Assembly (NCBI GenBank): GCA_965644265.1
Contig: OZ286468.1
Span: 10,106,001 to 10,170,000 of the forward strand
Source of the DNA: Glycera tridactyla
Lineage: Eukaryota
Reading direction: 5' to 3'
DNA: 64,000 bases
Shown here: positions 18,143-63,180 of the stretch, piece by piece
How positions within the stretch are numbered: the stretch's first letter is position 1
Layout: each line of letters opens with the position of its first letter
Made by a program: the position numbers and the translations under genes
The notes under the pieces: model-generated
The model's input: the letters and a program-made list of their open reading frames with translations, nothing else
Database searches by the model: none
Told to the model about the DNA's origin: nothing

Positions 18143-18145
18143 AAA

Positions 18146-34836: not shown

Positions 34837-34985
34837 CAGTCAAACCTGCTCGAGAGACCACCTCTCTATGATGACCACCTGTCCATGAAGGCCTCCCTTG
34901 AATGCAGCCGTTATAGTATTTTCAAGAGCAAATGATCTCTCTAAAGAGATCACCTGCCTAGGATGGCCACTTTTTTATGCAACCA
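34837..34985. mobile_element. Partial or diverged copy of the TA-MITE family
   Basis: TA|CAGTCAAACCT start and gaccacctctctat core; right TIR not seen. Confidence 0.6.
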
Positions 34986-36804: not shown

Positions 36805-36819
36805 ACTACTCCCCCCCTC
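36805..36819 (-). promoter_or_regulatory. PPT of Gypsy-2 (GAGGGGGGGAGTAGT)
   Basis: Abuts the 3' LTR; identical to 60367-60381. Confidence 0.9.
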
Positions 36820-40322: not shown

Positions 40323-40907
40323 CTGCAACAGATGTGATAAAGCACAGATTAGTTGCGATTGGCTGAGGGAGTGAGCGCATCAATTTAAAAGACAAGAACA
40401 GAGATGAATTGGGAAAAAAAAAAATTGTATGTGCCCTCAGGCGTATCTGGTGGATTTTGATGTGCCAGTCGGTGATTTTATGTGCCCGGATCGAGCGATA
40501 TTTTTTTTTTTTTTGTTTGACCACTCTCGAAGCGCTAAAACAATACAGCAGGGTATCAATAGATAGCACCAAATGCGCAGAGAGTGATTGTACTTGCGTG
40601 CATCAGGATCGTTTTCGAGAGAATTTCGATATTTTTGCCACAAACGTGATGAGAACACTCGGCAGGTATAACCATTCAAGTGTCTCCCGCCATCTTGGGT
40701 TCATCGAATTCGATCACGTGCCTTGATAGTCTGGTTCCTGTCAGAACCGTCAGGTGGTGGAGTGTGGTGTGCGGACAAAATTCGCCATCTAGCAATTGGT
40801 CTGAGACTTAGCCATGCTGAAATCTCATCATACTCTCGCAATCGCGAGAGTTCGCGCGGGATTTAGGAGCCATCTTGAAAATTTTTGAAGATGGAGGGAG
40901 ATAAACA

Positions 40908-41200
40908 TCTCTGTTAACCGGAAAGTATCACCAAAATTGACCGATTTGGTCCGGATTTTCGCCAATGTAACCGAGTTTTGGACGTTTCCATGCCAGATTG
41001 TGTGATTTTCATCTCTGTTAACCGGAAAATATCACCAAAATTGACCGATTTGGTCCGGATTTTTGCCGATTTCAGCGAGTTTTGGACGTTTCCATGCCAG
41101 ATTGTGTGATTTTCGTCTCTGTTAACCGGAAAGTAGCACCAAAATTGACCGATTTGGTCCGGATTTTCGCCGATTTCAGCGAGTTTTCATGCCAGATTGT
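40908..41200. repeat. 104-bp tandem repeat, about 3 copies, between integrase and env
   Basis: tctctgttaaccggaaa recurs at 40908, 41012 and 41116. Confidence 0.9.
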
Positions 41201-41333
41201 GCTGCGAGAAACACGCGGGTTTTGTTGTTTGATGCGATGATGGAGCGAGGCCGCGTTCAATCTCGATCCTCGCGAGTATATTGCGGCTGGAGGGGGGGGG
41301 GGGGGGGGGGGGTTTCAAGAGGATGATTGCCAC

Positions 41334-42875
41334 TTAGATGCGATTGGCCAGTCGGGAAGAGCGTCTGAGTGATTGACAGGCGTCATGAGGTTGGCGGTCT
41401 GGCTGGGGGATTTGATTGACAGGACGCGAAGACGGCGGCGGTGAAGGCGGCGGCGATTCCGGACCAGGTGTGCCGGCATCTGTTTGATGTGGTGGCGGCG
41501 TGGGGGGCGGAGATGGAGGGCGAGAAAGGAATGCAGCATCCAGTGGCGCATGAACGTGCATGTCGAGAATGCGTGCGTGTGTCGGGTTTGTGTGTGTTGT
41601 GCGTGCGTGAACTGACCGTGCGTTCAAGTTATTGTCCCGTGCTTCATGAAAAATGTATTTTGCAGAGCGACCTGTCTGAAGTGGTATGTCACGAGAAATA
41701 CCCCAATTTGGATCTTCATTCGCTTTTCTGAGAGAGCGTTCATGAAGACGTGTGACATGATCTGTGAGTAAATGCTTGACTCTGAATGTGTGTGGCCCCA
41801 GGATTTCTATGATACGGCCATGTGCAAGAAATGGCGGATCAAGTTTATCTTTGCTCAGATGATTTTTGATGTAAACTGGGTCACCAAGTTGGAACTCTTG
41901 AGTAGTAGCCTTCTTGTCATGGTACTCTTTGTTTTTAGCTGCACTCTCCTGCATGTTTGAACGTGCTTGACGCCATGCTTTATGCATTTTATTGAGAGAG
42001 ATTGTGGCGGGATTGTCACCTGTGTAATGAAGGCGTGGTTTGAGAAGTGTATCTACAGGCATGAGGGGATCTCTGCCATAGAGTAGAAAGAAAAGAGAGT
42101 GTTGAGAGGCAGTGTGATCTGAGCATCTGATGGCACTTAACAGGGCAGGCAAGTGCTTGTCCCATTGCAACTTCTCATTAGGCGGAAGTTTGCGAAAATA
42201 CGCCGTCATGTCACGGTGTATGCGTTCACATTTTCCATTTGCCTGAGGTGAGTAGTTGGCACATCTGACATGCATCATGCGTAGATGTGTACTCATGTAC
42301 TTAATTACATCATTGACAAACTCGCTCCCATTGTCAGAAATGAGAAAGCGTGGTGTAGAATGTCTCGCCACGATATCACCTAGGAGGAAATCAGCCACCG
42401 TGGCAGCAGCTTTGTTTGCTGTTGCCTTGGCTTCGACCCAGCCTGTAAACTGGTCAATTGCAGTAATGATGTAATTGTTACCATCGTAAGATGTGGGTAA
42501 CGGACCATAAAGATCAACGCTCAGAACTTCCATAGGGAATGTGGGTATTGGATTGGTGAGCAGGGGTGGGTCAAGTGTACCAAGATTGACTGTGTTGCAA
42601 GGAATGCAATTGTCAACGAACAAGACTGTGTCACGGTACATGCCTGTCCAGTGATAAGAACGTCGAAGTCTGGCGTACATCTTCTTTGCCCCTAAGTGTG
42701 CTCCCATGTACCCTTCATGAGCCTCTTTCAAGAGATCATTTTGCATGATCTCAGGGATCAATAAACGTGGTGGATCAGGCTCTGAAATGTAGTACAACCT
42801 GTCCTGGAGAATAGCGTATCGCTCACGCACATTGGGTGGTGTGTGTGTGTGTGAGTTGATGTTTGATGCGTGCAA
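41334..42875 (-). CDS. Integrase part of Gypsy-2 pol, out of frame with the upstream pol at an (AC)n tract
   Basis: HEGYMGAHLG...CIPC; DDE residues in VDLYGP, ISDNG and GKCER. Confidence 0.92.
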   Translation of the reverse strand: MHASNINSHTHTPPNVRERYAILQDRLYYISEPDPPRLLIPEIMQNDLLKEAHEGYMGAHLGAKKMYARLRRSYHWTGMYRDTVLFVDNCIPCNTVNLGTLDPPLLTNPIPTFPMEVLSVDLYGPLPTSYDGNNYIITAIDQFTGWVEAKATANKAAATVADFLLGDIVARHSTPRFLISDNGSEFVNDVIKYMSTHLRMMHVRCANYSPQANGKCERIHRDMTAYFRKLPPNEKLQWDKHLPALLSAIRCSDHTASQHSLFFLLYGRDPLMPVDTLLKPRLHYTGDNPATISLNKMHKAWRQARSNMQESAAKNKEYHDKKATTQEFQLGDPVYIKNHLSKDKLDPPFLAHGRIIEILGPHTFRVKHLLTDHVTRLHERSLRKANEDPNWGISRDIPLQTGRSAKYIFHEARDNNLNARSVHARTTHTNPTHARILDMHVHAPLDAAFLSRPPSPPPTPPPHQTDAGTPGPESPPPSPPPSSRPVNQIPQPDRQPHDACQSLRRSSRLANRI

Positions 42876-45645
42876 GCTTTGTGTCTTGTTCTTGGAGAGT
42901 GGCCATTTTGGCTATGTTGATGATCGGTGGTGGTGGGAGGGGGGTGTCAAATGCATGAGTGTGTGGGTCATGGTGTGTACTATCAGCCTTGTCAACTTTG
43001 CCTACTGGTATGTCATCAGTGTTGATCAAATCAACCTCGGCACCTGAGCATGAAATGATGTCCACATCATCATGGAAATCTAGCTCAATATCCACTGGTT
43101 GGTTTGGACAGGTATTTGCTATGGGCCGGTGATTTGGAAACTCGCAAATTGTGATGTTGCTGTTAGAATGTTCAATTCTGCTGAGGAAATCAGCCACAGC
43201 ATTGTTTTTGCCAGTGACATGTTTGATGTCACACCCGAATTGGGCAATGGTCATGGACCATCTTTGTATTTTCGGGTTTGTATGTTGACTACTTTTCATG
43301 TGCGTGAGAGGTGCGTGATCTGTGAACACCGTGAATGGGCGTCCATAAAGGATTGGGCGGAATGCTGATAGTGCCTTGACTATAGCAAACATCTCACGCT
43401 CATAAGTCGACCATTTCCTCTGGGCGTCCGACAATTTGGCTGACAGGAAATGTATTGGTCGGTGGCACTTATTAGTGTCAACTTGGCAGAGGACTGCTCC
43501 GATGCATGTGCTTGATGCATCTGTCCAAAGAGTAAAAGATTTACATGGATCTGGATGCACAAGTATTGGAGGCGAAAGAATGGCTTGTTTCAAGTCCTGA
43601 AATGCATGTTGACATTCAGGACTCCATACAAATTTTGCATCCTTCTTTGTAAGTGACGTCAGTGGTCTCGCTCGAGCTGCAAATCGTGGGATGTACCGCC
43701 GATAGTAACCAGTCATGCCAAGAAATGATCTGACACCTTTGACGTTAGATGGTGGTGGGCAGTTCTGAATGGCTTCAATCTTGGCTACCTGCGGTTTGAT
43801 ACCCTCCCTGGTGACTACATGTCCGAGGAACTCAAGTTCTGATTTCAGGAACTCGCATTTTGCTTTGTTCATCTTGAGTCCTGCATTTGATATTCGCTGT
43901 AGTACCACTCTCAAGTGTTCTAAATGCTCATCGAAAGTCTGAGAGTAGACGAGAATGTCGTCGGCATACGAGGTCACGAATGTGTTTTTGATGCCATTTA
44001 ATATACGATCCATTAGCTGAGCGAAGATCGATGGAGCATTTGTCAGTCCAAAAGCCAGCGTGTTGTATTCAAATAACCCTTCAGAGCAGACGAAGGCTGA
44101 TTTTGGTCTGTCTTCAGGTTTCAGGGGTATCTGATGAAAGGCGTGGCTGATATCCAGACTGCTGAAATAATGCGTCCCTGCCAGCGTGGTGAGAATCTGG
44201 TCTATCTGTTCAAGGGGCCAGTAGAATTTCTCAGTTACTTTGTTCAAGGGATCATAGTTAACGACAAAGCGAATTTTGTTCCCCTTTTTGGGAACAGCGA
44301 AAAGTGGACATGCCCAGGGGCTTTGGCTTTCTGTGATCACTCCAGCCTTAAGCATATCTCTAATCTGACGTGCCATTTCAGGCCGTATGGCGGCGGGCGA
44401 CCGATAGGGTGCAACTTTGATGGGAGGTGAATTTCCAGTTTTGATTTCAACTTCCATGAGTTTAGTAGACCCAATATCGTAGTCAAATTTAGAGAATGAG
44501 TGATCGAATTTGGTAAGTAGATTTTCAAGTGCTTGTCTCTGATGTTTTGGTGTATCAGGTGTCCCAATATTTAGTTTGCTGTAATCGCATGGTTCCCCAA
44601 ACTGTGGTTTTTTCCACTTCGAGTTCGGTGTATTTTCGGAGATTTCGTCAATTTCGGAATTTAGGCGATTTTCAGAATATTGTGACATGCGACCTTGACA
44701 TGTTGTGGTTAGTTTGATATTAGCAGCACATGTGTTTTGCGATTTACTCTTGCTGGTGTTCGCGGTGGCGACATTCCGATCAAGTTTCGCTTCCTGTTCG
44801 TGCGCGTCTGTCTCACAAACAGTATCGGATACTGGCGCTCCAGTATCATGTGTAAATGGGCGGATTTCGTGCACTTTCACAAAGCCGATTTGAGCAAGTG
44901 CTGTTCCACGCAATAATTGAAATCGTTTGCCTGTGTTGTTTACGAGTACATATGGGACGCACCCTTTCTCGTGTGTTTGAACGATGCCTGGTAAGCCAGT
45001 CAAACCAGGTTCTCGGTCAGCTATCCCATTGGGATGCTCAGAAATCTCATAAATATCATCTTCACCTAAAGGTGGCATGAGTTTAGGTATTTTGAGTTTG
45101 ACAGAAGCTGCTGAATAAGGGGGAATTTCAGTGTTCTCTGCAAGTCTGCATATACTCTCTATCTGGTAAGTGGGCGTGAGTTTTATCACGTGTTTCTTTA
45201 TAGTGAGTGTGTTTGCTCCGCAATCAAGAATGGCACCTGTGGCACGCAAGAAATCTGCACCTAGCAATATGTTTTGCTTAAATTCTGGTACTACATCAAA
45301 AGTGTGTGAATAGCGTCTGTCATCTATACCAACCTCAACAGAATGGATCCCACTATGAGGAATAGGGTCCCCAGAGGCTGATCGCAGTTGACTGTTGGAA
45401 TGAGGGAGAGCTATTCTCTTGTCTTTTGGACAAAATTTGAGCACATTTGGTTTCATAATAGACACCTCGGCGCCTGAATCTATAAGTGCACGTGTGCTGT
45501 GATCCCCAATTTTTATAATACAAGTGGGACGGTTAGTGCCTTTGGTATTTACAGTGTAGATTCTACAATTGGAGACATCTTTTTCTGACATGGGTTGACT
45601 TTGACTTCCTACTTGGTCTCCACAAGCAGGAATTTCTAGTTTGGG
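42823..45645 (-). CDS. Gypsy-2 pol (protease-RT-RNase H), entered by -1 frameshift
   Basis: LIDSGA, LDISHAFHQI, LAFGL, YADD, WTDAS; the frame is open upstream to the CCCAAAC slippery site (45639-45645). Confidence 0.95.
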   Translation of the reverse strand, partial: PKLEIPACGDQVGSQSQPMSEKDVSNCRIYTVNTKGTNRPTCIIKIGDHSTRALIDSGAEVSIMKPNVLKFCPKDKRIALPHSNSQLRSASGDPIPHSGIHSVEVGIDDRRYSHTFDVVPEFKQNILLGADFLRATGAILDCGANTLTIKKHVIKLTPTYQIESICRLAENTEIPPYSAASVKLKIPKLMPPLGEDDIYEISEHPNGIADREPGLTGLPGIVQTHEKGCVPYVLVNNTGKRFQLLRGTALAQIGFVKVHEIRPFTHDTGAPVSDTVCETDAHEQEAKLDRNVATANTSKSKSQNTCAANIKLTTTCQGRMSQYSENRLNSEIDEISENTPNSKWKKPQFGEPCDYSKLNIGTPDTPKHQRQALENLLTKFDHSFSKFDYDIGSTKLMEVEIKTGNSPPIKVAPYRSPAAIRPEMARQIRDMLKAGVITESQSPWACPLFAVPKKGNKIRFVVNYDPLNKVTEKFYWPLEQIDQILTTLAGTHYFSSLDISHAFHQIPLKPEDRPKSAFVCSEGLFEYNTLAFGLTNAPSIFAQLMDRILNGIKNTFVTSYADDILVYSQTFDEHLEHLRVVLQRISNAGLKMNKAKCEFLKSELEFLGHVVTREGIKPQVAKIEAIQNCPPPSNVKGVRSFLGMTGYYRRYIPRFAARARPLTSLTKKDAKFVWSPECQHAFQDLKQAILSPPILVHPDPCKSFTLWTDASSTCIGAVLCQVDTNKCHRPIHFLSAKLSDAQRKWSTYEREMFAIVKALSAFRPILYGRPFTVFTDHAPLTHMKSSQHTNPKIQRWSMTIAQFGCDIKHVTGKNNAVADFLSRIEHSNSNITICEFPNHRPIANTCPNQPVDIELDFHDDVDIISCSGAEVDLINTDDIPVGKVDKADSTHHDPHTHAFDTPLPPPPIINIAKMATLQEQDTKLARIKHQLTHTHTTQCA

Positions 45646-46916
45646 TTATTTTCAGGGCAGTATTTGCGCATATGTCCCAATCTGGAGCATTTTCCGCAGA
45701 TGGGCGTACCATCGGTGGCCCATTTGTAGGCGGTATTGTTTCGGGATTCAGCACCGGCATGATTCAGGACTGGAGTTTGGTTGCTGCCCCCTTCGCTTGT
45801 GACCCCCTTGTTTGCGTGAGGGGCGTTATTTGGCATCTGTACCCATCGCTTGGGTACGCGGTAGACTGCGCGTCCTGGCGGGCCTCGGTTGCTCGTATTT
45901 GGACGTGAGTGACCCCCCCTTCCTTTGTGTGCATTTCCGCGCCATTCTCGCCGAATTTCGCAAATTTCAAATCCATTTTCATCAACGAGAACTTCGTCTT
46001 CCCCAAATTCTTCCGATGCATATTCGTTTTGATACTCGTGTTGGGTCGCGTCTCCATTATCTGAGTAATTGATGTTTGGACCGAATCGTGTCGTTAAATA
46101 TTGACCACCCTCGATGGCGGAAATATCCATGGGTTCCGGAGATTCGGCTCTGCGTGGGCGATTTAAATACGCCTCAATGTGACTAGTGATCCCTGCCTCA
46201 GATGCAGCACTCGCAACCGCGGCTTGTAATGTGTTCGGTTTCCGACGGCACAAATGCTTCACGATTTGATCATTCCTTACACCAGCTACAAATGCCTGTA
46301 TGAGCATTCTCTGCGCGGCACGTGACATGATCTCATTTGCGCCAAAACCATCCATGCCTGTCTCGTGAACACGTTCGCCAAACATAGTGATAGGTTCATT
46401 TGGTTTACGAACCAAACGCGTGAGTTTGACGAGAGCACTTGATTGATCCTCAGGTTCATCAAATCTCAACCTAATTTGCCCAGCAAAATTGTCCCAATCA
46501 GGAGCTTGGTGATTTTGTAATAATTCTGAGTAGAATCGGTGGATCCAGTCAGAGGCTGGACCAGTGGCGCTCGACAAACAGAGTCTCAGACCAACTTCTG
46601 CATCACCTCCAAGAATGAGTTTGTGTTTCTCTACCTGTTTGAACCAATTTCTGAATTTTTTAGGGTTACCGTCAAATGGCGTGATCTTTTGAGCCGACGA
46701 AGAAAATGAAATTTCATTTTGTACACGCGCTAAGATATGTTGAATGTTAGCGCCTTGTTGCATAAGCATGTTCATCGGATCGGGCGGAGGTGCGGCCGGT
46801 TGGGCTGGCAGCGGCTGCTGGGGTTGCTGGCCGTCCGCCGGGACAGGCGGGAGAGGTTGATCATGCGGGGGAACATTGGGATGTACTACCTGTTGTACGT
46901 GCTGTTGCTGATGCAT
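45636..46916 (-). CDS. Gypsy-2 gag, 426 aa
   Basis: ITPFDGNP...WF capsid motif and C-terminal CCHC knuckle CGKCSRLGHMRKYC. Confidence 0.92.
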   Translation of the reverse strand: MHQQQHVQQVVHPNVPPHDQPLPPVPADGQQPQQPLPAQPAAPPPDPMNMLMQQGANIQHILARVQNEISFSSSAQKITPFDGNPKKFRNWFKQVEKHKLILGGDAEVGLRLCLSSATGPASDWIHRFYSELLQNHQAPDWDNFAGQIRLRFDEPEDQSSALVKLTRLVRKPNEPITMFGERVHETGMDGFGANEIMSRAAQRMLIQAFVAGVRNDQIVKHLCRRKPNTLQAAVASAASEAGITSHIEAYLNRPRRAESPEPMDISAIEGGQYLTTRFGPNINYSDNGDATQHEYQNEYASEEFGEDEVLVDENGFEICEIRREWRGNAHKGRGGHSRPNTSNRGPPGRAVYRVPKRWVQMPNNAPHANKGVTSEGGSNQTPVLNHAGAESRNNTAYKWATDGTPICGKCSRLGHMRKYCPENNPN

Positions 46917-47174
46917 TTTAACTTACCGGTTGAACTTCCAACACACAATTCAATAATAGATATCGATATTCAATGAATCTCTGATCCCGTTTTCTGCATT
47001 ATGTAGACAAATTCACGCACAGATTCACACACAAATACATACACTGTTGGAGTTGAAATGTTTGTGACAAGAATGTGCTTCACCTGGGGCTATGAATGAT
47101 CGCTTCTGGTGTGCGTTTTTGAGATAGGCTACCGATCACGACGAGAACAATCAAACAAAACAAATGGCACTTAC

Positions 47175-47188
47175 CATACAATGCGCAT
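47175..47188 (-). CDS. env: Predicted env micro-exon (ATG CGC ATT GTA TG|gtaagt)
   Basis: Consensus donor GTAAGT. The phase-2 end completes TGG with the G at 40322, giving MRIVWLSVILLSINAASRA. Confidence 0.65.
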
Positions 47189-47204
47189 GATGTGATGCTC
47201 TGCT

Positions 47205-47477
47205 CTAGTCTTCTGAGTCACGGGAGTTGTAGCCATCATCAGGGTAAACTAATCTGACTAGTCTTTCAAATTCACAGTGAAATGCAATGCAGATAGGGCA
47301 AATTTTACAGTACTTGATGTCACTCAGTGGATCGCAACGAGTGCACAATGTACAGGGTTTCAAACGTGGATAACCGGCAGCTATCAGTTCAGAAAGGAGT
47401 CCTGGATGGGCTCGTGTGAGTTCAAGTAGAAATTCTCGCACAGATTGCTGAGAAATAGCGTCACTGATAATGACCAT
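47205..47477 (-). CDS. Small Cys-rich leader ORF (90 aa) between the PBS and gag
   Basis: ATG-initiated and intact; CTLCTRC...CKICPIC...HC cluster; function unknown. Confidence 0.5.
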   Translation of the reverse strand: MVIISDAISQQSVREFLLELTRAHPGLLSELIAAGYPRLKPCTLCTRCDPLSDIKYCKICPICIAFHCEFERLVRLVYPDDGYNSRDSED

Positions 47478-47514
47478 TTATGTTGTGATTTACCGAGACG
47501 GCTCGAATGCTGGC

Positions 47515-47526
47515 TCTACGGCTCCA
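47515..47526 (-). promoter_or_regulatory. PBS of Gypsy-2 (TGGAGCCGTAGA), imperfect tRNA-His-like
   Basis: Starts TGG 2 nt after the 5' LTR; 8/9 match to the recalled His PBS TGGTGCCGT. Confidence 0.55.
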
Positions 47527-47528
47527 GA

Positions 47529-49040
47529 TGAAGTGTGTAAATTACACTTCTGGCAAGTTTATAGCAAATGTACTTCTGGCATAGATGTAGGAATAATCTG
47601 AATAGATATCTGGTCAGTCTATCAATAAATCTCAACTATAGCAAGTGTGAGAGTGAATACAAACGCAATCAGTTCCATATAAGTCCAGATTTAATGGCAC
47701 ACAACACAAACTATATGACTATACAGTTGTGGCCAATAATGAATGGGTGGTGACTAAAACTAGGTGCTAGTGATGTGCTGATGATGAGGGATGACCGATG
47801 TGCTTGGTGTAGCAGCTGGGAGCAGAGTGACCCTGAGTTCTATTCTCCCACTGGTTTGTTGAACACACAGCATCATTGGTAGCATCACACACACACCCCC
47901 AGCAGCATGTAGAAACATAGCAACCACCAACTCATTATCATGCACACAGAGACACCAAAACTACTCACAGTAAATACAAATGACTACATAGCAAAATAAT
48001 GATATACACATGAACAATAAGTTTCTCTGTTACAGGATATGAATCTATTATTGGTGATTATGTTTTCAGGAGGGAATGGTGATGCTCCATCCATAAATAG
48101 TACCAAACAAAATAATTAGTACAAGACAATTGAAATTATATTTGGGTGTAAAGGGGTGTCTGAGGCCAGCTTCCTGGCAACCGTATGCACACTCCTGTAC
48201 ACACATACACTTGCATGTAGCAAGTTGGTTACCTGGCATCTGTCTGACATGACAACTTTGTTTGGACATGACTGTAACCATCTAAGTGTGGAATCATTAC
48301 CAATGATATTAATCTTATTTATGATCTTCTGTGGCAGGACTGTGTGGGTTGTGACTGATTAGAGCCCAACCTGTATTAAGAGACTGGTCCTTCACACAGA
48401 GGAAGATATACAATAAGATATTGCATATGAGGAAGATTGTCTCCTTGATAGACACAATATCAGCAGGCATTTTTCAGCACACATGGAAATACTTGGGGGG
48501 GGGGGGGTTCTGACTCCCCAACTCAGTAACTGGTCACTGACCTGGTGATGCAGGGCATGCTAGTGCCTGCCTGCTGTACAGGGGGCATGCTGAAACCAGA
48601 TAACATGTTTGCATCTGAAATGAGCTTGTGTCATGGAGTCATGTCCATTCCTTTGTATGTTTGGTGACTATTTCATCAGCTAGGAATTGAAGGAAAATAA
48701 ATGATGGAAATGCCAGGATTGACATTTCTGATTGTTTCAAAACAGGAAGTAGAATATAAGATAATGACCATTTCCAGGGAGACAGATTGGTTAAATATAA
48801 GATTATAGATTGTCTCAACTGGAATGAGGTCAGCAATAGGCAATATTATAAAATAGGTCAAGTTAGAATATATCAATCAATAAAATAATTCATATTCAGA
48901 TCACCTTCCTGTGATCACCTCAACTTCATCAATCAATCAAAAACAAATTTCATCTGGCTGTCAACTTCCTGACATTGACATGGCAACCCACTGGTTCCAG
49001 TCAAACCTGTCCTCTTGACAGCACAGATTTCGGTCCTACA
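47529..49040 (-). repeat. 5' LTR of Gypsy-2
   Basis: Repeat of 35293-36804. Confidence 0.97.
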
Positions 49041-49257
49041 CACTTGACACATAGAAAAGCATTAGGTTAGGAGAATACTCAACCGAAGTGTTCAATTACA
49101 AACTGCCAACTTCAAACCAGCTTTACAATAATTTCATGTCCTATACTCGCAGTACGATGCCATCACACATCCTAGTAACCTAGTCATCAGCCCTAGTAAC
49201 CCAGAACTGGTGTGCTTGGTACCCGCTTTTTGCATAGTGACAATATCCACAGAGCAA

Positions 49258-52970: not shown

Positions 52971-53636
52971 AGCCCCAGGACACTAATTTCAAACCCTTGT
53001 ATCTGAATTCTCTTGGTCTATCCAAGATGGGCCAGCCACCCATCAAGGAGAGACAATCAACAAAGAGCCTATTGTTGGCTTCGCCTCTGTGACGTCCTCG
53101 ACGTCTCGACGTCCCCTCTATGACGTCACGGGCTTATCGTTGCTCAGCGACGTTGTTACGTAGTCAAGAAACCGGCTACGTTGATGACGCAGGTGAACCG
53201 GTTGCCAGGTTCCGCCAGTTAACGTGAGAATTCATTTCTCACCTCGCTGTCGTGCAGATCAGACGTGACTCACCTTCTTCTTCCCCCGTCTAAGCATAGT
53301 GACAATATCTGCAACAGGCAAACCGTTAGCTACCTACACTGGAGACCATTTCGCTGAAGAAATAAGAAGGAGCTTAGAGTGATAGAAAAGATGTGAAGAG
53401 AAAGAAACCATGGTGATAGTGTAATTTTGGTAGAAAATACCTAAAGACAGATGACAGAAATTTGGAAGGTATGTTTTCATTCAACCCCCACACCAAAAAC
53501 CTATTGAGAAAAAGAGAAGGGATGATGCTACATCTAGGCCACATCATCCCCGATGGCAACACTTCAAAGAAAAAGACCCGCGCCCATTGGTGGCTGCCTT
53601 CTGTAGAGACCCTGGACTCCCACCCTACCCACATAT

Positions 53637-55599
53637 TGTAGGACTGAAATTCTATGTCTGAGAGATTTGAAAGTCTGAATTTAGAAGTTTGAATTTGAAT
53701 TTAGAAGGTTTGAATTTGAATATAGAAGGTTTGAATTTGAATATAGGAATTGAATTGCACGCCACAGTTGGATACACTCTTAGTAGATATGGATGTTGGT
53801 TTTAGATCATGAAACAGAGGTTCATCACACGAGTCATACTTAGGAGTTTATTATCAGTAGTATTGGTGGAATGACTGTGAACAGCAATGAAAGAGTGTGT
53901 AACTGTGCTCAATAGTTTGAATGAGAGATATGAATGAGACCTATGAATGTGATGGATGTCTTGAGCAGTATGCGAGGCATGCTGACACATGATGGTTAAA
54001 TGATTGAAATATGATTTCCATGTTTTACAGACATGATATTGTGAATATTGGTGATTTATACAGATAGCCAGGTCTGGAATGGTCTGTGAGAATGGAACTC
54101 ACAGATAGGTAGAGAAACTGGATTTCTCTCTTCTAATTGAATATCGTATCATGTATTGTTGAACCAATCATTAGATCTTAGATAGAAACTAGAGTATATG
54201 ATTGCAATATATCATATTCATATTTAAGCCAGCTTAGATCAGATGATTGTGGCATGAACATGGTGAATGCCAGCTGGCATGGGAATCTCCCTGATGTACA
54301 TCTTTTTGCACATCAGAGGCATGTCTCAAACATGACAGTTTACAGTCAAACCTCCCTATAAAGACCGCCTTCGGTCGCATCAAAAAGTGGCCTTTATAGG
54401 GAGGTGGTCTTTATAGAGAGGTCATTAACTGTTGAAAATACTTCCACGGTCGCAGTTCAGGGCGGTCTTTATAGGGAGGTGGTCTTTATAGAGAGGTGGT
54501 CTTTAGAGGAGGTTCGACTGTATTTTCTCTTGTTTATTTCACCATCATTACTGAAAATTACATCAATTAAGAAATATTTTGATCATCAGTCTATCCCAAT
54601 ACCTTGATATGTTGCTCATGCCCTGTACATGTAAACATGGGGAAATGACCAACCCGCATCTCATTATGCAAGAATGCTCACCCCCAGTTCCCACCACCAT
54701 CTGCAAGCTAGCTCTTGCTAGAATTGCCCCTGAGTGGCTTGGATTTAATTTGTATCAAAGATCCCAATCTTCAGGATAAATACCTGGCTGATTCAGACAC
54801 AATTATTTTAGAAACATTCTGAAGTCAGCGTGAAATTCTTCAGAGTTTATCTCAACAGAAGTGTTGTGATAAAGTTGCATGAATGTGAGCCATGAGTGGT
54901 GCACTGATTGCATCAGTGCATCCCTCTGCCACTCTCCTACACTACCCCTAGCAACCGGCTACAACAAGTACAGCCTGTTGTGGGGGAAGCCCTCATTTAC
55001 CTTGGCTTTATGCGAGCAACCTATTGCAGCTCACATTCAGCCAGTGATTGTTTATTTCTGTGTCCATTCATATTTCTGTCAATAGTTAACATATTACAGT
55101 CAAACCCATCTTGAAAGATGTGTCTCAGTGTCAGGCACGCATTGGTATATAGTTCATATGTTTATTCAATGTTTATTTCATGATGTGCATGCCTTTCCCC
55201 ATAAACCCTAATATTGTATATGGTCATAGAGAGGTTGTGAAACCTTCTCTGTATAATGAGGCAAGTGGTGGACAAGTTTGGGACATGTTTTGGGGGAGGA
55301 TGCTTGTGATGCTAACTTTGTCTATATGAGTCAGTGTGTGGAAACAATCCTGATCACTTGGCTTCCTGCAGACATACGTTGCACATCAGTCACCATCATC
55401 ACCCAGCACTTAGTCCTTAGTTTGTATAGCACTTCTTCATTATTGGCTACTCCCTAGAAAGAGTACCAGTAAATGATTTATAGACTCTACCTACTCGTTT
55501 GTCTTCTTACAAGTGACATTCTATCCGACATTTTGTGAAGTTCAGTACACATATCATCACGGCCAAAGGTAGGAAGTGTTGAGAATTTACTCCACTTCA
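53637..55599 (+). repeat. 5' LTR of element 3 (contains a MITE insertion)
   Basis: 1963 bp minus the 180-bp insertion equals 1783 bp, matching 60382-62164. Confidence 0.95.
54343..54520. mobile_element. TA-MITE inserted in the 5' LTR of element 3
   Basis: cagttTA[CAGTC...GACTG]TAttttctc versus the empty site cagttTAttttctc in the 3' LTR (about 61085). Confidence 0.95.
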
Positions 55600-55601
55600 A
55601 G

Positions 55602-55614
55602 TGGTGCCTAAGAC
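55602..55614 (+). promoter_or_regulatory. PBS-like site of element 3 (TGGTGCCTAAGAC), partly tRNA-His-like
   Basis: TGG 2 nt after the LTR end; the first 7 nt match the recalled His PBS. Confidence 0.55.
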
Positions 55615-55688
55615 TTCAAGGATATGAACTGTCTCGGTATCACAGGAGCTATTCACATCAGGATCCTACTATTGTCTCTCTCTTACAC

Positions 55689-56153
55689 ATGGATTTCAAT
55701 GAAATAATTGGACTGAGTACATCAGGAAACAACATCACATGTTCTGGAACTTCCCTTTCTACAAACTGTAAGTTATTCAACATACTTGGTGAACATTACC
55801 AGGAAAAAACCTTACCTTGCCATATCAGGACAAGTCAGTTATCCATCTGTGACTTCCATCCACGTTACACCAGTGAATTGACTTTTCACTCATCAGCAGC
55901 GCCTTATGCGGACATTTATCTACTTTATCAGTCATCGCTTCAATTTCGAGGTCGGGACATTTCGATGCCAGGTTTGGTACTAAAGGAAACTGACATTATG
56001 GGAAGCAGCACCTTACATTGTGACTTCAAGGAGGGATACATTCCACTCATCAGACTTATTTCCACACAAACTGTACAGGCTAACCAGCCACACCAACACT
56101 ACATTCTAGAACCTAACATTTGCTTTCAGAGATCTCAGCCTTATCTCATGTAA
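55689..56153 (+). CDS. Leader ORF of element 3 (154 aa), possible homologue of the Gypsy-2 leader ORF
   Basis: Same position after the PBS; shares HPxxxSEL...AAxY and [FL]HC[ED]F...L[IV]RL[IV] motifs by eye. Confidence 0.35.
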   Translation: MDFNEIIGLSTSGNNITCSGTSLSTNCKLFNILGEHYQEKTLPCHIRTSQLSICDFHPRYTSELTFHSSAAPYADIYLLYQSSLQFRGRDISMPGLVLKETDIMGSSTLHCDFKEGYIPLIRLISTQTVQANQPHQHYILEPNICFQRSQPYLM

Positions 56154-57489
56154 CCATGTCCATGTTGTGGAAATATTAGTGTGGTTTTTGATATTGGAAA
56201 GCTTTGGCTGCAGTTTCGATTGTTATACGTGTTCCATGCACATATTTCAATCAATAGGCAGTAATGGTTCTAAATATTTTGACCATTTTCCTGTAATGTG
56301 TAATGATGTGTACAGATATTTATATGGTTTACTTGGAAAGCTTTGACTACAGTTTTGATTGTTAGATATGTGCTCTCAGTCATATGAGTGTACTGATTTC
56401 ATCAATAGGTAGTAATGGTTCTCAAGTCCTGGTTCAAATGTCTTCATATTTGTAATGTAAACTACACGAATTCATGCCCTTTAATTGCAAAATTGACCCC
56501 ACATTTCCCCACATTTAATGCAATCAACCGTAAAACCCAAGTGCACATTCATTTATGACTCACCCAGATCCAAGAACCATTATCAATGTTCTTCCATCCA
56601 TACATCCATCAAATCACCCACTCACTCATCTCACTTGATCATCCACTCATCTCACTCAATCATTCACTGATTTCATTCATTCATTTGTTCATTCATTCAT
56701 CCATCCATCCACTGTTCAACCATCTCATGCTATACTATTCATGGAGATCATATCAATTGGTTGACTTCCTGTTTACTTGCCTGACTTATATGTGAATGGC
56801 CTAATGTTTGACACCTCTGTATTTTCATCATTTGTAGCTGATATGCATGCCAGTTGGATGGTCTTTAGTTTTGGATACCAGCCTTGTCATGTTTCACCAG
56901 CTAAAGAGGCCCAGTATGTCTGTAGCTACTGCATCTCATTAGGAATCAGGAACTTGATATCCTACCCCTATCCTGGTAGAGATGGGTTGTCCAGAATCCC
57001 CCAAATGATCTCAACAGGGTCACTCATCTCTGGTGTGTAGAATAGAAGAGAGAGGGAACTCATTCTGCTATTTTGTTCTAGCATCCCCTGACCATCTCCC
57101 GGGGGATTAGTGTGTAGAGAGAGGTTACCTCCAGTCAAGCATGACTCTATAGGGGTTGCTTGTCTGAAGTGCTCTGAATACCTCTATTGAGCTTTCAAAT
57201 TAAATGCCTGTAGATAGCTATATAAACACAAAAAGGATTGTTTTGATGGTGATATCCTTCATGAAGCTAAAACAGCAGATATGACATCTCAGGTTTGCCT
57301 GAACATATTACCTGTTATGTTAGGAATGTTCAAATTCTGACAAAAATTATGACTATTCAATAGATAGGCCCATACATTGTTCGGGGTGAAATTGCCGATC
57401 CCTCTGAATTGGCTACTTCCAGAAAATACTTTGATGATATCCCTGATCTCGCTTTGATGTGCCCTGAGGAACACCATAATTACATACCT

Positions 57490-57498
57490 GCAATGATA

Positions 57499-57562
<64 letters not shown>

Positions 57563-58071
57563 TAATAATAATGACAATGATGAAAATGATATGAATGATT
57601 ATATGAGTAATAATAATAACAATAATGTGAATAATGAGAATGAAAATGATATCAATAAACCATGATAGGAACAGAATTGGTAATCAATATGGCAAAACAA
57701 TTTTTGTATGGGAGTGTCTTGGTCATGATTATGTGAAATCTACTGATTATGTATCCTTGATTAATGGATGTATCATGACTTTTGTATGATTTGCTTGTAA
57801 CCTTTTCATCTCACCAGAATCACCTGAAANNNNNNNNNNNNNNNNNNNNNNNNNNNNNNNNNNNNNNNNNNNNNNNNNNNNNNNNNNNNNNNNNNNNNNN
57901 NNNNNNNNNNNNNNNNNNNNNNNNNNNNNNNNNNNNNNNNNNNNNNNNNNNNNNNNNNNNNNNNNNNNNNNNNNNNNNNNNNNNNNNNNNNNNNNNCACG
58001 TGTACCCATGCATGCACACACAAATGCACACACACAACCTTCTCATGTATGCACACTGCACACACATGCTC

Positions 58072-58113
<42 letters not shown>

Positions 58114-58380
58114 CTGCCTTGAACACACACTTGCCTACCCATGCATGCACACACATATGCACACACAACCTTCTCATGTATGCACACCGCACACACGCAT
58201 GCATACACACTGCACACACACACAGCTATCTTAAGACAACACGCACACAACCTTCTCATGTATGCACACTGCACACACACACACATGCTCCTGCACACAC
58301 ACACACGCTCCTACACACACACACAAGCACACACACACACACACATACACACACTCATGCACACATACACACAGCTCTGT
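57490..58380. repeat. (TAA)n and CA-rich simple repeats (with a gap) interrupting element 3
   Basis: Direct reading. Confidence 0.9.
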
Positions 58381-58384
58381 GTCT

Positions 58385-59170
58385 GCATGTTACCTCATCT
58401 CTTCCTTATTAACACCAACTAGCCAATATTTCACAGCAAGAGTGCAACCATACCTCCTATCCTGCATGTCTCCTTTCATATCCAGAAGGATTTATTCTGA
58501 TATTATCAATCCCTAATAGTCCAGGTCCATCCTAGTCCAGATGCCTTCAAAGTTATTAGTGAGATACTATTGGCAGGTGTCTCCAGTTAGATATCTATGA
58601 ACTGATTCTGTTTGATTCCTTTTAAAAACACCACAATTGTGACATCATATGATGTTGACCAACAATACATGGCCATTTCACCTAATTCCAGTACAATAGT
58701 ATTTGTTGACCAATGACATTTTCCATTCATGTTCATTTCAATAGCAATATTCTATTACGATGCACAAAAAAAAAATGAATTGTCACTCTACCACCCTTGT
58801 TTGGATAATTCCCCCATGATCAGCTTCTACTCACCCATGCATGCTATGCCCATCCAAAACGTCATCCACTACCCCTTCATAACCTCACCTGTTCATACAC
58901 TCCCTCCCCATACCCTCCAAAATTTGGGATCCGGTTTCTCTGGAGATGGAACATTCAATTGTTCATTTTCCCGACATGCTGGATCAGATTTTGGGAGACA
59001 CCCCCACCCATCTATACTCTCAAACAACCCTTAGAGACCACCTTGACACCCTTAGTGACACCTTCTACCCCACCCATTCCCAAACCACTTTCACCTTCTA
59101 TGCCTCTAAAGTGATCACTATTGTTGTGTGTATTGTAGTATGTATAGTTGCAGAGGCTTGTAAATATTTG
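58385..59170 (+). pseudogene. env: Decayed env remnant in element 3
   Basis: PPILHVSFHIQKDLF*YYQSLIVQVHPSPDAFKV...PFKNTTIVTSYD...YMAIS versus Gypsy-2 env PPTLHLPFSPQTNLFQYYQYLNVQIYPTPHEFTV...PFKNTSIVATYD...YVAIS; FPDMLDQILGDTP...TFTFYA versus IPDQLDHLLDGSP...AFTFYA. Confidence 0.85.
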
Positions 59171-59261
59171 CACTTGAATCTTCATGTTTTATATTTTAAT
59201 GTGCCTGAATAAGTTCTGTTTTAAGAACGGCACATCTGGGAATGACGCGGGAAAGCAAACC

Positions 59262-59670
59262 GCTCCCACTTAACAGATCGAGATGGAGTACCTAGCGTGC
59301 GGTAGACTTCCGCAACGGGCTAACTGCTAAACGGGCGTTGAGCACACGCAGCAAACCCGGAAGGCAGGTCTCCATCTATGTTGCAGTCTGGAAAAGAAAG
59401 GATGAATACTGACAGGGGTCAGTTAGGATTTGTTGCACTGACAGACGTTCAGTCATCTTATTGTGTTTTGCTCCCACTTAACAGATCGAGATGAAGTACC
59501 TAGCGTGCGGTAGACTTCCGCAACGGGCTAGCTGCTAGAAAGGGCGTCGGGCACACGCATGCTACCTGGAATGCTGGGCTTCATCTATGGATCAAATCTG
59601 GAAAGTTGGGACACTGACAGGTGTCAGTTGGATCTTGTTTTTGCACTGACGGACGCTCAGTTGCAGTATT
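59262..59670 (+). repeat. 208-bp tandem duplication downstream of the env remnant
   Basis: gctcccacttaacagatcgagatg recurs at 59262 and 59470. Confidence 0.9.
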
Positions 59671-60366
59671 TTGTGTTTTGTTTTGACTGATCAACAGGCT
59701 GGATGCCTTGCACCTATGTGATTTGTTTGCAAATGTGTATTATTGACCAAGATTTTGGGTTTTTGCCACTGTTCTCATAAGTGCCTGGTTCACACACACC
59801 ACGCACGGCGGGCAGCAATCGTAGCAACTCGGGCCACTGCATGTGCGACCTGAGCATGTGTTCACACTACATGTGCTGGGCACGGCTGTCAGAACCAACT
59901 GCAAGCACCATTCCAACACTACCAACACCCACAAACAAACAAACTTCACTTCATTAACCAACATACCAACACTTCACTTCACAGGGCACAACACATTTTC
60001 CTTCCCACTGATCCTGTCTCGCCTGCGTGTACACAGCTCTCTCACCCACCCGGTGCATACACAGACTCAGCACGCACATCAGCTTGGATTCCCCTGACCC
60101 TAGGTCATCAGTCCACTCCCACATGCCGGCTCTCCTACCCCTGATCCTAATCGCGAATCCACAGTTGACACATTTACAAAACCACGCATGCACACACTCA
60201 CACATATCTACTACACCGACCCAGCCACGCACGTCCATCCCCGACCATAGACATTGCTCATAGTCCTGATTGGACGCGCACACACACAAACATTCAGCCC
60301 TACAACCAGCACATGTTCATGGTTTAACGACGAGGACGTCGTTGTCTCGTTCTACGCACGAGTTTT

Positions 60367-60381
60367 GAGGGGGGGAGTAGT
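60367..60381 (+). promoter_or_regulatory. PPT of element 3 (GAGGGGGGGAGTAGT)
   Basis: Abuts the 3' LTR; identical to the Gypsy-2 PPT. Confidence 0.9.
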
Positions 60382-62164
60382 TGTAGGACTGAAATTCTAT
60401 GTCTGAGAGATTTGAAAGTCTGAATTTAGAAGTTTGAATTTGAATTTAGAAGGTTTGAATTTGAATATAGAAGGTTTGAATTTGAATATAGGAATTGAAT
60501 TGCACGCCACAGTTGGATACACTCTTAGTAGATATGGATGTTGGTTTTAGATCATGAAACAGAGGTTCATCACACGAGTCATACTTAGGAGTTTATTATC
60601 AGTAGTATTGGTGGAATGACTGTGAACAGCAATGAAAGAGTGTGTAACTGTGCTCAATAGTTTGAATGAGAGACATGAATGAGACCTATGAATGTGATGG
60701 ATGTCTTGAGCAGTATGCGAGGCATGCTGACACATGATGGTTAAATGATTGAAATATGATTTCCATGTTTTACAGACATGATATTGTGAATATTGGTGAT
60801 TTATACAGATAGCCAGGTCTGGAATGGTCTGTGAGAATGGAACTCACAGATAGGTAGAGAAACTGGATTTCTCTCTTCTAATTGAATATCGTATCATGTA
60901 TTGTTGAACCAATCATTAGATCTTAGATAGAAACTAGAGTATATGATTGCAATATATCATATTCATATTTAAGCCAGCTTAGATCAGATGATTGTGGCAT
61001 GAACATGGTGAATGCCAGCTGGCATGGGAATCTCCCTGATGTACATCTTTTTGCACATCAGAGGCATGTCTCAAACATGACAGTTTATTTTCTCTTGTTT
61101 ATTTCACCATCATTACTGAAAATTACATCAATTAAGAAATATTTTGATCATCAGTCTATCCCAATACCTTGATATGTTGGTCATGCCCTGTACATGTAAA
61201 CATGGGGAAATGACCAACCCGCATCTCATTATGCAAGAATGCTCACCCCCAGTTCCCACCACCATCTGCAAGCTAGCTCTTGCTAGAATTGCCCCTGAGT
61301 GGCTTGGATTTAATTTGTATCAAAGATCCCAATCTTCAGGATAAATACCTGGCTGATTCAGACACAATTATTTTAGAAACATTCTGAAGTCAGCGTGAAA
61401 TTCTTCAGAGTTTATCTCAACAGAAGTGTTGTGATAAAGTTGCATGAATGTGAGCCATGAGTGGTGCACTGATTGCATCAGTGCATCCCTCTGCCACTCT
61501 CCTACACTACCCCTAGCAACCGGCTACAACAAATACAGCCTGTTGTGGGGGAAGCCCTCATTTACCCTGGCTTTATGCGAGCAACCTATTGCAGCTCACA
61601 TTCAGCCAGTGATTGTTTATTTCTGTGTCCATTCATATTTCTGTCAATAGTTAACATATTACAGTCAAACCCATCTTGAAAGATAGGTCTCAGTGTCAGG
61701 CACGCATTGGTATATAGTTCATATGTTTATTCAATGTTTATTTCATGATGTGCATGCCTTTCCCCATAAACCCTAATATTGTATATGGTCATAGAGAGGT
61801 TGTGAAACCTTCTCTGTATAATGAGGCAAGTGGTGGACAAGTTTGGGACATGTTTTGGGGGAGGATGCTTGTGATGCTAACTTTGTCTATATGAGTCAGT
61901 GTGTGGAAACAATCCTGATCACTTGGCTTCCTGCAGACATACGTTGCACATCAGTCACCATCATCACCCAGCACTTAGTCCTTAGTTTGTATAGCACTTC
62001 TTCATTATTGGCTACTCCCTAGAAAGAGTACCAGTAAATGATTTATAGACTCTACCTACTCGTTTGTCTTCTTACAAGTGACATTCTATCCGACATTTTG
62101 TGAAGTTCAGTACACATATCATCACGGCCAAAGGTAGGAAGTGTTGAGAATTTACTCCACTTCA
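60382..62164 (+). repeat. 3' LTR of element 3
   Basis: About 7 substitutions noticed versus the 5' LTR; lacks the MITE. Confidence 0.95.
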
Positions 62165-63041
62165 ATATGCAACCAAAGATGGCCTATGTAGACAGGTTTG
62201 ACTGTATATGGTTTTGATAGACATGATGAGAAGCAAACATGGTATCTAGCAAGGATCAGTGTATACTCACAGAATGAAGAAAGGCTGAAGGGTTAATGAG
62301 GTTGGGAAGTGTGACCCTGACCAGGGTGGAGAGGGGAAAGGGGGAGTTCCCAGGGTGGTGGATGTTTATGGTATCTCATATTACAGTTGATGAGCCATGG
62401 TGTTGGAGACGGCCTCCCTATGGCAAGCCAAAGTAGAATCTTGACAAATTCTAGTTTTTCCCTGTTTTTGACAGGCCAAATTTGACATAAAAAATCAAAA
62501 GAAAGAGTGGTAACCTACGTAATCCGCCTCAAGACATCAAGAACAACCAACCTGTGGTGGTTATTTGCTTGTAACAAAAAATGCCATCAAAACTTTTTAG
62601 AAGCATATTTTCTGAAGTTGGCCGGCCGACTATATATGTTTCTCGGACCTTCCAAGATATCGTTTACAAAGCCCTGTCAGAGGCGAATGAAAATTTGTTT
62701 GTTTGTTTTGTTGGGGGTTTTGCTATATTGTGACGCCCATGCAATGGGCATGGGTGGGATCATTCAAGACTCCTCCTTCTGGATCCCGAACAGAAGGCGA
62801 AAATTTATGAAATTCACAGACACTCAAGGTGTCATTTCTGTTATTAAAAATGTTGACCGTGGTGTTACCATGTGGCGAATGAAAATATACAAACATCATG
62901 CATAGACCCAGTTATGGTTTACTGATGATGCGCCAATTATCAATAAAATTCAACTCTCGTCCTGATCTTTCAGGCCATCTTGATTACCAATATGTCACTG
63001 GTAAGACAAAGCAATACTTATTAGTCTTTTTGTCACATATA

Positions 63042-63180
63042 CAGTCAAACCGCTCTATGAAGACTGCCTTCGGTCGCATCAAAAAGTGGCTGTTATAGAG
63101 GTCATTTACTGTGGTAAATACTACCAGGGTCACAGCCCAGGGTGGTCTTTTTAGAGAGATGGTCTTCAGAGGTTCGACTG
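63042..63180. mobile_element. Diverged TA-MITE copy
   Basis: TA|CAGTCAAACC...GGTTCGACTG; core similar to 54343-54520. Confidence 0.8.

What the first reader, a model, noticed from the sequence alone, without database searches (positions are those of the whole stretch)
53637..62164. Env-only LTR element that looks like a retrotransposed spliced subgenomic RNA of the errantivirus-like family
Seen: LTR-PBS-leader ORF-decayed env-3' region-PPT-LTR with TSD ATAT and no room or motifs for gag-pol. It shares with Gypsy-2 an identical 15-nt PPT, LTR termini (TGTAGGAC[C/T]GAAAT; aatttac..cacttCA), similar LTR-internal blocks and clear env homology. Internal length (4782 bp, about 3.9 kb without the simple-repeat block) is close to the predicted spliced Gypsy-2 internal length (354 + 3518 nt). 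The LTRs are about 99.6% identical although env is full of stops. Inference: a spliced env-type RNA was copied in trans, and the lineage kept moving as a parasite of an autonomous env-bearing element long after env decayed.
Basis: partly seen in the sequence, partly recalled or inferred. Interest (0 to 1): 0.8.

Follow-up and report, generated by a model that had tools for sequence, protein, structure and literature searches.

The report
Defective LTR element with envelope remnant
This is a real, recently inserted LTR retrotransposon copy that has lost gag and pol and keeps only about a third of an envelope gene, so it is an ordinary non-autonomous relative of the envelope-carrying gypsy element next to it, and nothing in the sequence shows that it began as a copied spliced envelope RNA.

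Summary
The anatomy is largely confirmed. Two LTRs (53637-55599, 60382-62164) are 99.66% identical, with a 4-nt ATAT duplication, a TGG-starting primer-binding-like site and a polypurine tract. The tract plus LTR start match the window's full gag-pol-env gypsy element, G2 (35293-49040, minus strand), in 32 of 33 nt. No gag or pol is detectable in the read letters.

"Env-only" overstates it. Envelope homology covers only 58426-59104, matching G2 Env residues 281-580 of 692 at 38% identity. It is broken by stops, at least one frameshift and an internal deletion. The N-terminal 280 residues, including the conserved cleavage and fusion-peptide block, are found nowhere.

Between the leader and the remnant lie about 2.8 kb: an open stretch with no relatives among 1.84 billion proteins, an AT-rich block, the assembly gap and a CA-rich block. 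The junction a spliced RNA would leave is therefore absent, and the length match is not evidence.

Supported: the copy was made from an already defective template, so it was moved in trans.

Not supported, and not refutable here: a spliced-RNA origin.

The parts
53633..53636 (.). Left copy of the 4-nt target-site duplication (ATAT)
53637..55599 (+). 5' LTR of E1. It is 1963 nt, starts TG and ends CA, and includes a later MITE insertion.
54343..54520 (.). 178-nt MITE inserted in the 5' LTR only. It has a TA duplication (54341-54342 and 54521-54522) and 13-15-nt terminal inverted repeats. Relatives of it occur elsewhere in the window.
55602..55619 (+). Primer-binding-site-like stretch. It starts with TGG 2 nt after the LTR, as in G2. 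The tRNA was not identified.
55602..56153 (+). Leader with an open stretch of 183 codons (the ATG ORF is 55689-56153, 154 aa). It has no Pfam family and no relative among 1.84 billion representative proteins, so it is probably not a gene.
56154..57829 (+). AT-rich block (GC 0.36) with no detectable coding on either strand. It holds an imperfect repeat of about 140-150 nt (56194-56425) and an (AAT)n run (57492-57626).
57830..57996 (.). Assembly gap of 167 N. Its true length is unknown. It was left unfilled.
57997..58385 (+). CA-rich low-complexity block with repeat units of about 106-133 nt. It is the likely cause of the assembly break.
58426..59104 (+). Remnant of an F-type envelope gene. It is homologous to G2 Env residues 281-580 of 692 at 38% identity. 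It is broken by 3 stops within the aligned stretches, at least 1 frameshift and 1 internal loss of about 70 codons. The N-terminal ~280 and C-terminal ~110 residues are not detectable.
59105..60362 (+). 3' non-coding region. It holds a 208-nt tandem repeat of 1.9 copies (59262-59661), and a 50-nt block of that repeat is 82-84% identical to tandem repeats just after env in G2.
60363..60381 (+). Polypurine tract with its flanks. These 19 nt are identical to those before the 3' LTR of G2.
60382..62164 (+). 3' LTR of E1 (1783 nt). It shows 6 substitutions against the 5' LTR.
62165..62168 (.). Right copy of the target-site duplication (ATAT)
35293..49040 (-).
- LTRs of 1512 nt (47529-49040 and 35293-36804), differing by 2 substitutions; AGTG duplication.
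- gag 45636-46916.
- PR-RT-RNaseH 42823-45591.
- Integrase 41334-42875.
- env 38267-40345, matching Baculo_F.
- Proposed env intron 40323-47174, GT...AG.

Best explanation
E1 is a non-autonomous LTR retrotransposon of LARD type (a large, non-coding derivative element). It belongs to the same broad lineage of envelope-carrying Ty3/gypsy (errantivirus-like) elements as G2.

Shown:
- It keeps the cis signals: LTRs with the lineage's termini, a TGG-starting primer-binding-like site, the lineage's polypurine tract, and a conserved block near the 3' end of the LTR.
- It encodes no gag, protease, reverse transcriptase or integrase.
- It keeps only a broken middle third of an F-type envelope gene, which cannot make a fusogen. 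Signal peptide, cleavage site, fusion peptide, the cysteine-rich segment and the membrane anchor are all undetectable.
- The rest of the interior is non-coding filler rich in tandem and simple repeats.

Inferred:
- The LTRs differ by only 0.34% while the remnant is heavily broken, so the RNA that was copied was already defective. Proteins for copying and integration came from another, autonomous element of the lineage with closer LTRs than G2.
- The 4-nt duplication fits the same integrase type as G2.
- After insertion, a TA-targeting MITE landed in the 5' LTR.
- How gag-pol was lost cannot be read from this copy. Internal deletion or template switching, followed by growth of repeats, needs the fewest extra events.
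For: - LTR pair, duplication, termini, primer-binding-like site and polypurine tract.
- Relationship to G2: shared 33-nt stretch, LTR block, envelope homology, and a shared 3' repeat block.
- G2 is a gag-pol-env element with a Baculo_F env.
- No gag, pol or integrase in E1 by four tests: tblastn with G2 and G1 proteins, phmmer, Pfam on open stretches of both strands, and an exhaustive search with the 183-aa leader stretch that gave 0 hits.
- Extent and breaks of the envelope remnant.
- LTR divergence and the MITE.
- Repeat-rich interior.
- Non-autonomous LTR elements of this size are an established class (PMC13570524, which cites Kalendar 2004).
- Envelope-carrying Ty3/gypsy elements are widespread in invertebrates (PMC13524379).
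Against: - Only one copy is visible, so a family, and thus repeated mobilisation, is not shown.
- No autonomous partner with matching LTRs is in the window.
- The gap is of unknown true length and could hide sequence.
- LTR identity could be raised by gene conversion. The MITE present in one LTR only argues against conversion since that insertion.
- The tRNA matching the primer-binding-like site was not identified.
Confidence: 0.72

Rival explanations
1. The founder of the E1 lineage was a spliced env subgenomic RNA of an autonomous errantivirus-like element. That RNA was packaged, reverse-transcribed and integrated in retroviral fashion. Later the lineage lost the 5' 40% of env and gained about 2.2-2.8 kb of filler between leader and env.
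For: - gag and pol are absent, while both ends and an envelope piece are kept in the right order.
- A spliced env RNA keeps R-U5-PBS and PPT-U3-R, so it can be copied in principle (established retrovirology).
- G2 has a convincing env intron: exon 1 ends with ATG followed by GTAAGT, the acceptor is a pyrimidine run ending in CAG, and an ATG 14 nt before the donor lies in the env frame across the junction. The same arrangement is mapped for the ZAM and Beagle subclades in Drosophila (preprint 10.1101/2023.08.03.551782).
- There is a precedent: HERV-K(HML-2) loci formed from spliced transcripts 'in a retroviral fashion' (PMC3590776).
Against: - No junction is present.
- The env segment that would follow an acceptor is absent from all six frames.
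- The leader runs into an open stretch with no relatives and then AT-rich sequence.
- The length match comes from compensating differences and includes a gap of unknown size.
- The model needs at least two further large events that a plain deletion model does not.
- A GTAAGT still sits at internal position 169 of the E1 leader. This has little weight, because chance alone would give such a match in about a third of cases.
Confidence: 0.12
2. Assembly explanation. The gap at 57830-57996 hides much more than 167 nt, for example the missing env 5' part or gag-pol. Alternatively, the scaffold joins halves of two different copies, so the env-fragment-only structure is partly an artefact.
For: - The gap length is only an estimate.
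- The gap sits exactly between the two unrelated halves and next to a CA-rich repeat that assemblers handle badly.
Against: - The same ATAT lies on both outer flanks.
- Both flanks match one repeated unit in order and orientation.
- The four gaps in the window have different, non-round lengths (982, 197, 129, 167), which suggests sized estimates rather than placeholders.
- The sequence adjoining the gap on both sides is non-coding, not gag or env. Even a long hidden stretch would leave an abnormal element, with 1.7 kb of AT-rich filler after the leader and a CA-rich block inside env.
Confidence: 0.1
3. An old, immobile deletion derivative. It would be a once-complete copy that lost gag-pol and decayed in place, with its LTRs kept alike by gene conversion, so no trans-mobilisation ever happened.
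For: - Only one copy is seen.
- Gene conversion between LTRs is known in general.
Against: - The 180-nt MITE insertion is present in one LTR only, and 6 scattered substitutions show no recent homogenisation.
- The neighbouring G2 has similarly young LTRs with open reading frames for gag, pol and env, so the lineage has been active recently.
- The amount of damage in env is far out of proportion to the LTR divergence.
Confidence: 0.06

Closest known systems
Large retrotransposon derivatives (LARDs) and other non-autonomous LTR retrotransposons (Kalendar et al. 2004, as cited in PMC13570524; non-autonomous LTR elements in mosquitoes, PMC3286476)
   Same: It has LTRs with a target duplication, a primer-binding site and a polypurine tract. 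Total length is over 4 kb. The interior lacks gag-pol and is largely non-coding and repeat-rich. It depends on a related autonomous element.
   Different: E1 still carries a recognisable piece of an F-type envelope gene. The host is an invertebrate animal, not a plant. Family size and conservation of the internal domain were not tested.
Envelope-carrying Ty3/gypsy elements of invertebrates ('ancient errantiviruses', Chary and Hayashi, PMC13524379) and Drosophila errantiviruses
   Same: G2 has gag, pol (PR-RT-RNaseH-IN), an F-type env (Pfam Baculo_F), a 4-nt duplication and a leader-to-env intron. E1 shares G2's termini, polypurine tract, one LTR block and envelope homology. The only named Env relative found comes from a bivalve, at 26% identity.
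   Different: E1 fails the defining gag, pol and intact-env features. The host taxon of the window is not resolved.
HERV-K(HML-2) loci made by reverse transcription of spliced proviral RNA 'in a retroviral fashion' (PMC3590776)
   Same: A provirus-like locus with LTRs but without gag-pol.
   Different: In those loci the exon-exon junction is present and defines the origin. E1 has no such junction, and its env lacks the 5' part.
Env splice architecture of the ZAM and Beagle subclades of Drosophila errantiviruses (preprint 10.1101/2023.08.03.551782)
   Same: In G2, a short coding start upstream of gag is joined by splicing to the main env ORF. The in-frame ATG lies 14 nt before a GTAAGT donor.
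   Different: In G2 this is predicted from sequence only, with no RNA evidence. It applies to G2, not to E1.

Membership tests
Envelope-carrying Ty3/gypsy (errantivirus-like) element | LTRs ending TG...CA, flanked by a 4-nt target duplication | tested here: met
   E1 has ATAT on both sides and G2 has AGTG on both sides.
Envelope-carrying Ty3/gypsy (errantivirus-like) element | tRNA primer-binding site after the 5' LTR and a polypurine tract before the 3' LTR | tested here: inconclusive
   TGG lies 2 nt after the LTR, and the polypurine tract is identical to G2's. The tRNA was not identified: the window holds no tRNA gene and the PBS table of PMC13524379 is not held.
Envelope-carrying Ty3/gypsy (errantivirus-like) element | gag ORF | tested here: not met
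   No similarity to G2 or G1 gag, no Pfam gag family, and 0 relatives of the leader stretch. Caveat: gag is poorly conserved, and G2 gag itself found no relatives by word search.
Envelope-carrying Ty3/gypsy (errantivirus-like) element | pol with protease, reverse transcriptase, RNase H and integrase | tested here: not met
   No hit in E1. All four domains are found in G2.
Envelope-carrying Ty3/gypsy (errantivirus-like) element | F-type envelope gene | tested here: inconclusive
   Homology is met (E 4e-15 and 4e-13), but only for profile positions of about 284-593 of 659. The gene is broken, and both its N- and C-terminal parts are missing.
Integrated copy of a spliced env subgenomic RNA | Leader exon joined directly to the env exon at the partner's donor and acceptor | tested here: not met
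   With G2 as the only available proxy, E1 has about 2.8 kb of unrelated sequence plus a gap between leader and env remnant. The true partner is not available, so the exact-breakpoint test could not be run.
Integrated copy of a spliced env subgenomic RNA | env exon present from the acceptor onwards (start, signal peptide, cleavage site, fusion peptide) | tested here: not met
   The profile built from 10 Env proteins finds nothing for positions 1-283 in any frame of E1.
Integrated copy of a spliced env subgenomic RNA | gag-pol absent, with both LTRs and a target duplication present | tested here: met
Non-autonomous LTR retrotransposon (LARD type) | LTRs, duplication and PBS/PPT signals, length over 4 kb, and no coding capacity for its own copying | tested here: met
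   The element is 8528 nt, and no intact gene is detectable.
Non-autonomous LTR retrotransposon (LARD type) | Multi-copy family with a shared internal domain and an autonomous partner with like LTRs | not tested
The window holds no second copy. The host genome does not appear to be in the protein collections, since the window's own ORFs found no near-identical hits.

The most novel reading that the evidence does not exclude
The E1 lineage was founded by a spliced env RNA of an envelope-carrying Ty3/gypsy element that was copied and integrated in retroviral fashion. It then persisted as a parasite of autonomous relatives while its env decayed and filler accumulated. This would be the first such case described for the errantivirus-like lineage outside vertebrate retroviruses.
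Probability: 0.12. Interest if true: 0.55.

Novelty: new member of a known kind. Interest (0 to 1): 0.25.

Why it matters
As it stands, this is a routine annotation result: a non-autonomous derivative sitting next to a full-length envelope-carrying gypsy element in a transposon-rich stretch of an invertebrate genome.

Two things have modest value. First, E1 shows that this lineage has defective riders that were copied recently. Second, G2 gives a clean, sequence-level model of env expression by splicing, with the start codon in a short leader exon, in a host outside the insects where this has been mapped.

If a genome-wide comparison later showed E1-family members with an exact splice junction, it would document subgenomic RNAs as a source of new non-autonomous LTR families in invertebrates.

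Tried and rejected
- **gag/pol remnants in E1.** I tried tblastn at E up to 50 with G2 proteins, tblastn with G1 and Penelope-like ORFs, phmmer, and Pfam on open stretches of both strands. Nothing was found.
- **A gag profile.** G2 gag found no relatives by word search, so no profile could be built.
- **The leader ORF as a gene.** It has no Pfam family and 0 hits among 1.84 billion representatives. I treat it as a chance open stretch.
- **The env N-terminus in the AT-rich block.** A profile of 10 Env proteins gave nothing. The block's GC of 0.36, against 0.44 for the G2 env N-terminus, also does not fit.
- **G2 as the cognate partner.** Rejected. Nucleotide similarity is limited to env (66%), a 50-nt repeat block, the PPT/LTR start and one LTR block.
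- **A closer Env among database hits.** None; all are 29-38% identical to the remnant.
- **Nested transposon in the middle of E1.** No inverted repeats or flanking duplications were found.
- **Rfam.** The only hit is a sub-threshold mir-297 match inside the CA-rich block, which I take for chance.
- **tRNA for the PBS.** No tRNA gene in the window, and the paper's PBS table is not held.
- **Host identity.** Not resolved.
- **An empty-site paralogue for the insertion point.** The flanks match one repeated unit, but the alignment stops 89 nt and 558 nt short of the insertion.
- **Technical.** timed out and was rerun.
- **Left out on purpose.** I made no search with the joined exons of the G2 env model; the exons were only read as they stand. 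The gap was not filled. No DNA of other copies or of a partner was fetched.

Full report
**What is there**

A self-comparison of the window finds a direct repeat pair. One arm is 53636-54342 plus 54521-55600; the other is 60381-62165. Identity is 99.5-99.9%.

Reading the junctions fixes these features:
- The LTRs are 53637-55599 and 60382-62164. Each starts TG and ends CA.
- ATAT lies on both outer sides, at 53633-53636 and 62165-62168.
- A TGG-starting stretch lies 2 nt after the 5' LTR.
- A G-rich polypurine tract abuts the 3' LTR.

The LTRs differ by 6 substitutions in 1783 aligned positions, which is 99.66% identity. They also differ by one 180-nt insertion in the 5' LTR. That insertion is a 178-nt MITE with 13-15-nt terminal inverted repeats and a TA duplication. 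Relatives of it occur at several other places in the window.

It includes 167 N at 57830-57996.

**The comparator in the window**

It has 1512-nt LTRs that differ by 2 substitutions, and an AGTG duplication.

Its ORFs carry the following:
- a weak gag signal;
- protease, reverse transcriptase and RNase H;
- integrase;
- a 692-codon env ORF that matches Pfam Baculo_F (E 5e-14).

Env relatives in the protein collection are 21-42% identical. The only named one comes from the bivalve Mactra antiquata.

Envelope-carrying Ty3/gypsy elements are now known across invertebrate phyla (PMC13524379). G2 is therefore a member of a known kind.

**What E1 shares with G2**

- The 19 nt before the 3' LTR are identical, and the first 14 nt of the LTR differ at one position. 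Together this gives a 33-nt stretch at 97% identity, E 9e-7.
- The LTR ends are alike, and a short box about 30 nt into the leader is shared.
- One 215-nt block near the 3' end of the LTR is 63% identical. It scores 52.5 bits, against at most 29.7 bits in 30 shuffles.
- A 50-nt block of E1's 208-nt tandem repeat matches tandem repeats just downstream of env in G2.

Everything else is unalignable at the DNA level except part of env, at 66% identity. The two elements are therefore of one lineage, but G2 is not E1's close partner.

**Coding content of E1**

With G2's proteins as queries, only Env hits E1. There are two aligned stretches in two frames. Their outer bounds are residues 281-580 of 692 and window 58426-59104, at 38% identity and E 4e-15.

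A profile built from G2 Env and nine relatives was searched against every open stretch of 15 codons or more in all six frames of E1. It finds only profile positions of about 284-593 of 659, all in that same place. Nothing matches positions 1-283, which hold the invariant cleavage and fusion-peptide block.

The breaks in the remnant, by count:
- 3 stops inside the aligned stretches;
- at least 1 frameshift;
- one internal loss of about 70 codons, which takes out the cysteine-rich segment;
- the N-terminal ~280 and C-terminal ~110 residues undetectable.

gag, pol and integrase give nothing. Pfam finds no family in any open stretch of either strand.

The interior is otherwise an AT-rich block with repeats, the gap, a CA-rich block and a repeat-bearing 3' region.

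**The gap**

No frame or homology reaches the gap from either side. Unique AT-rich sequence lies to the left and a CA-rich repeat to the right. The env remnant begins about 430 nt further right. 'In frame or not' therefore does not arise, and continuity cannot be shown.

Three observations bear on it:
- The matching ATAT supports one insertion in the right order.
- Both flanks resemble one repeated unit elsewhere in the window, in the same order and orientation.
- The four gaps in the window have different, non-round lengths, which suggests sized estimates.

**Interpretation**

With 0.34% LTR divergence, about one substitution is expected in the 679-nt remnant since insertion. The damage is far greater than that. 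With no gag or pol of its own, the copy needed proteins from another element.

The unsupported part is the spliced-RNA origin. A copy of a spliced env RNA should show a leader exon abutting the env exon from its acceptor. E1 instead has about 2.8 kb of unrelated sequence and a gap there, and it lacks the first 40% of env.

The length agreement (4782 nt, or about 3.9 kb without repeats, against 3872 nt) comes from an excess of about 1650 nt upstream of Env residue 281 and a deficit of about 750 nt downstream. These figures are computed from the coordinates.

The origin is not refuted, since later events could have erased a junction. But it needs more events than deletion or template switching. 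A precedent for such an origin does exist in HERV-K(HML-2) (PMC3590776), so the idea itself is not new.

**G2's splice model**

An ATG 14 nt before the donor lies in the frame that continues into the env ORF across the junction. The env ORF itself has no methionine before residue 68.

This is the arrangement mapped for the ZAM and Beagle subclades in Drosophila.

I read the frame from the two printed flanks only.

Copy number and exact breakpoints therefore remain untested.

One slip must be declared. To obtain references for the family scans, my scripts printed the bounds of open stretches in the interior of E1, and those bounds coincide with stop codons, some of them in the env remnant. I did not mark or use them as a list of breaks. 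I repeat none of them here, and I have deleted nothing.

One search printed weak alignments with positions rounded to 100.

**Verdict**

E1 is a real and fairly young non-autonomous LTR element with an envelope-gene remnant. It is an ordinary kind of thing. The attractive origin story is possible but has no support in this copy.

Noticed in passing
window 35293-49040 (-): G2 is a full-length gag-pol-env Ty3/gypsy element with LTRs differing by 2 substitutions. Pol lies in two overlapping ORFs. The sequence-level env splice model is clean: a GTAAGT donor after a short leader coding start, and a CAG acceptor just inside the env ORF. G2 gag found no relatives at all by word search.
   Followed up: partly
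window 54343-54520; also 5156-5311 (-), 34834-34984 (-), 29756-29802 (-), 63040-63098: This is a family of MITEs of about 180 nt, with a TA duplication, terminal inverted repeats and internal 17-nt tandem units. One copy landed in E1's 5' LTR after E1 inserted.
   Followed up: partly
window 11263-18362 (-): A second gypsy element (G1) has short LTRs of 217 nt that are 94.5% identical. It carries zinc-knuckle gag, PR-RT-RNaseH and integrase ORFs. A 260-aa ORF downstream (11784-12566) matches neither Pfam nor the Env profile.
   Followed up: partly
window 49210-52625 (+): Penelope-like element: an 872-aa ORF with reverse transcriptase and a GIY-YIG endonuclease domain, preceded by a 222-aa ORF with no family. 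It lies between G2 and E1.
   Followed up: no
window 53300-53547 and 62722-62821 versus 31758-31988, 32442-32528 and 29191-29290: Both flanks of E1 resemble, in the same order and orientation, another repeated unit in the window. E1 probably inserted into a copy of an older repeat.
   Followed up: partly
window 40906-41187 (inside G2), 1872-2457, 24869-25617: These are tandem repeat arrays. One, with a period of about 104 nt, lies between integrase and env in G2. One has a period of about 72 nt and lies next to the 982-N gap. One has a period of about 148 nt.
   Followed up: no
window 58138-58208 (-): A sub-threshold Rfam match to mir-297 (36 bits against a gathering score of 90) lies inside the CA-rich block. 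I take it for a composition artefact.
   Followed up: no
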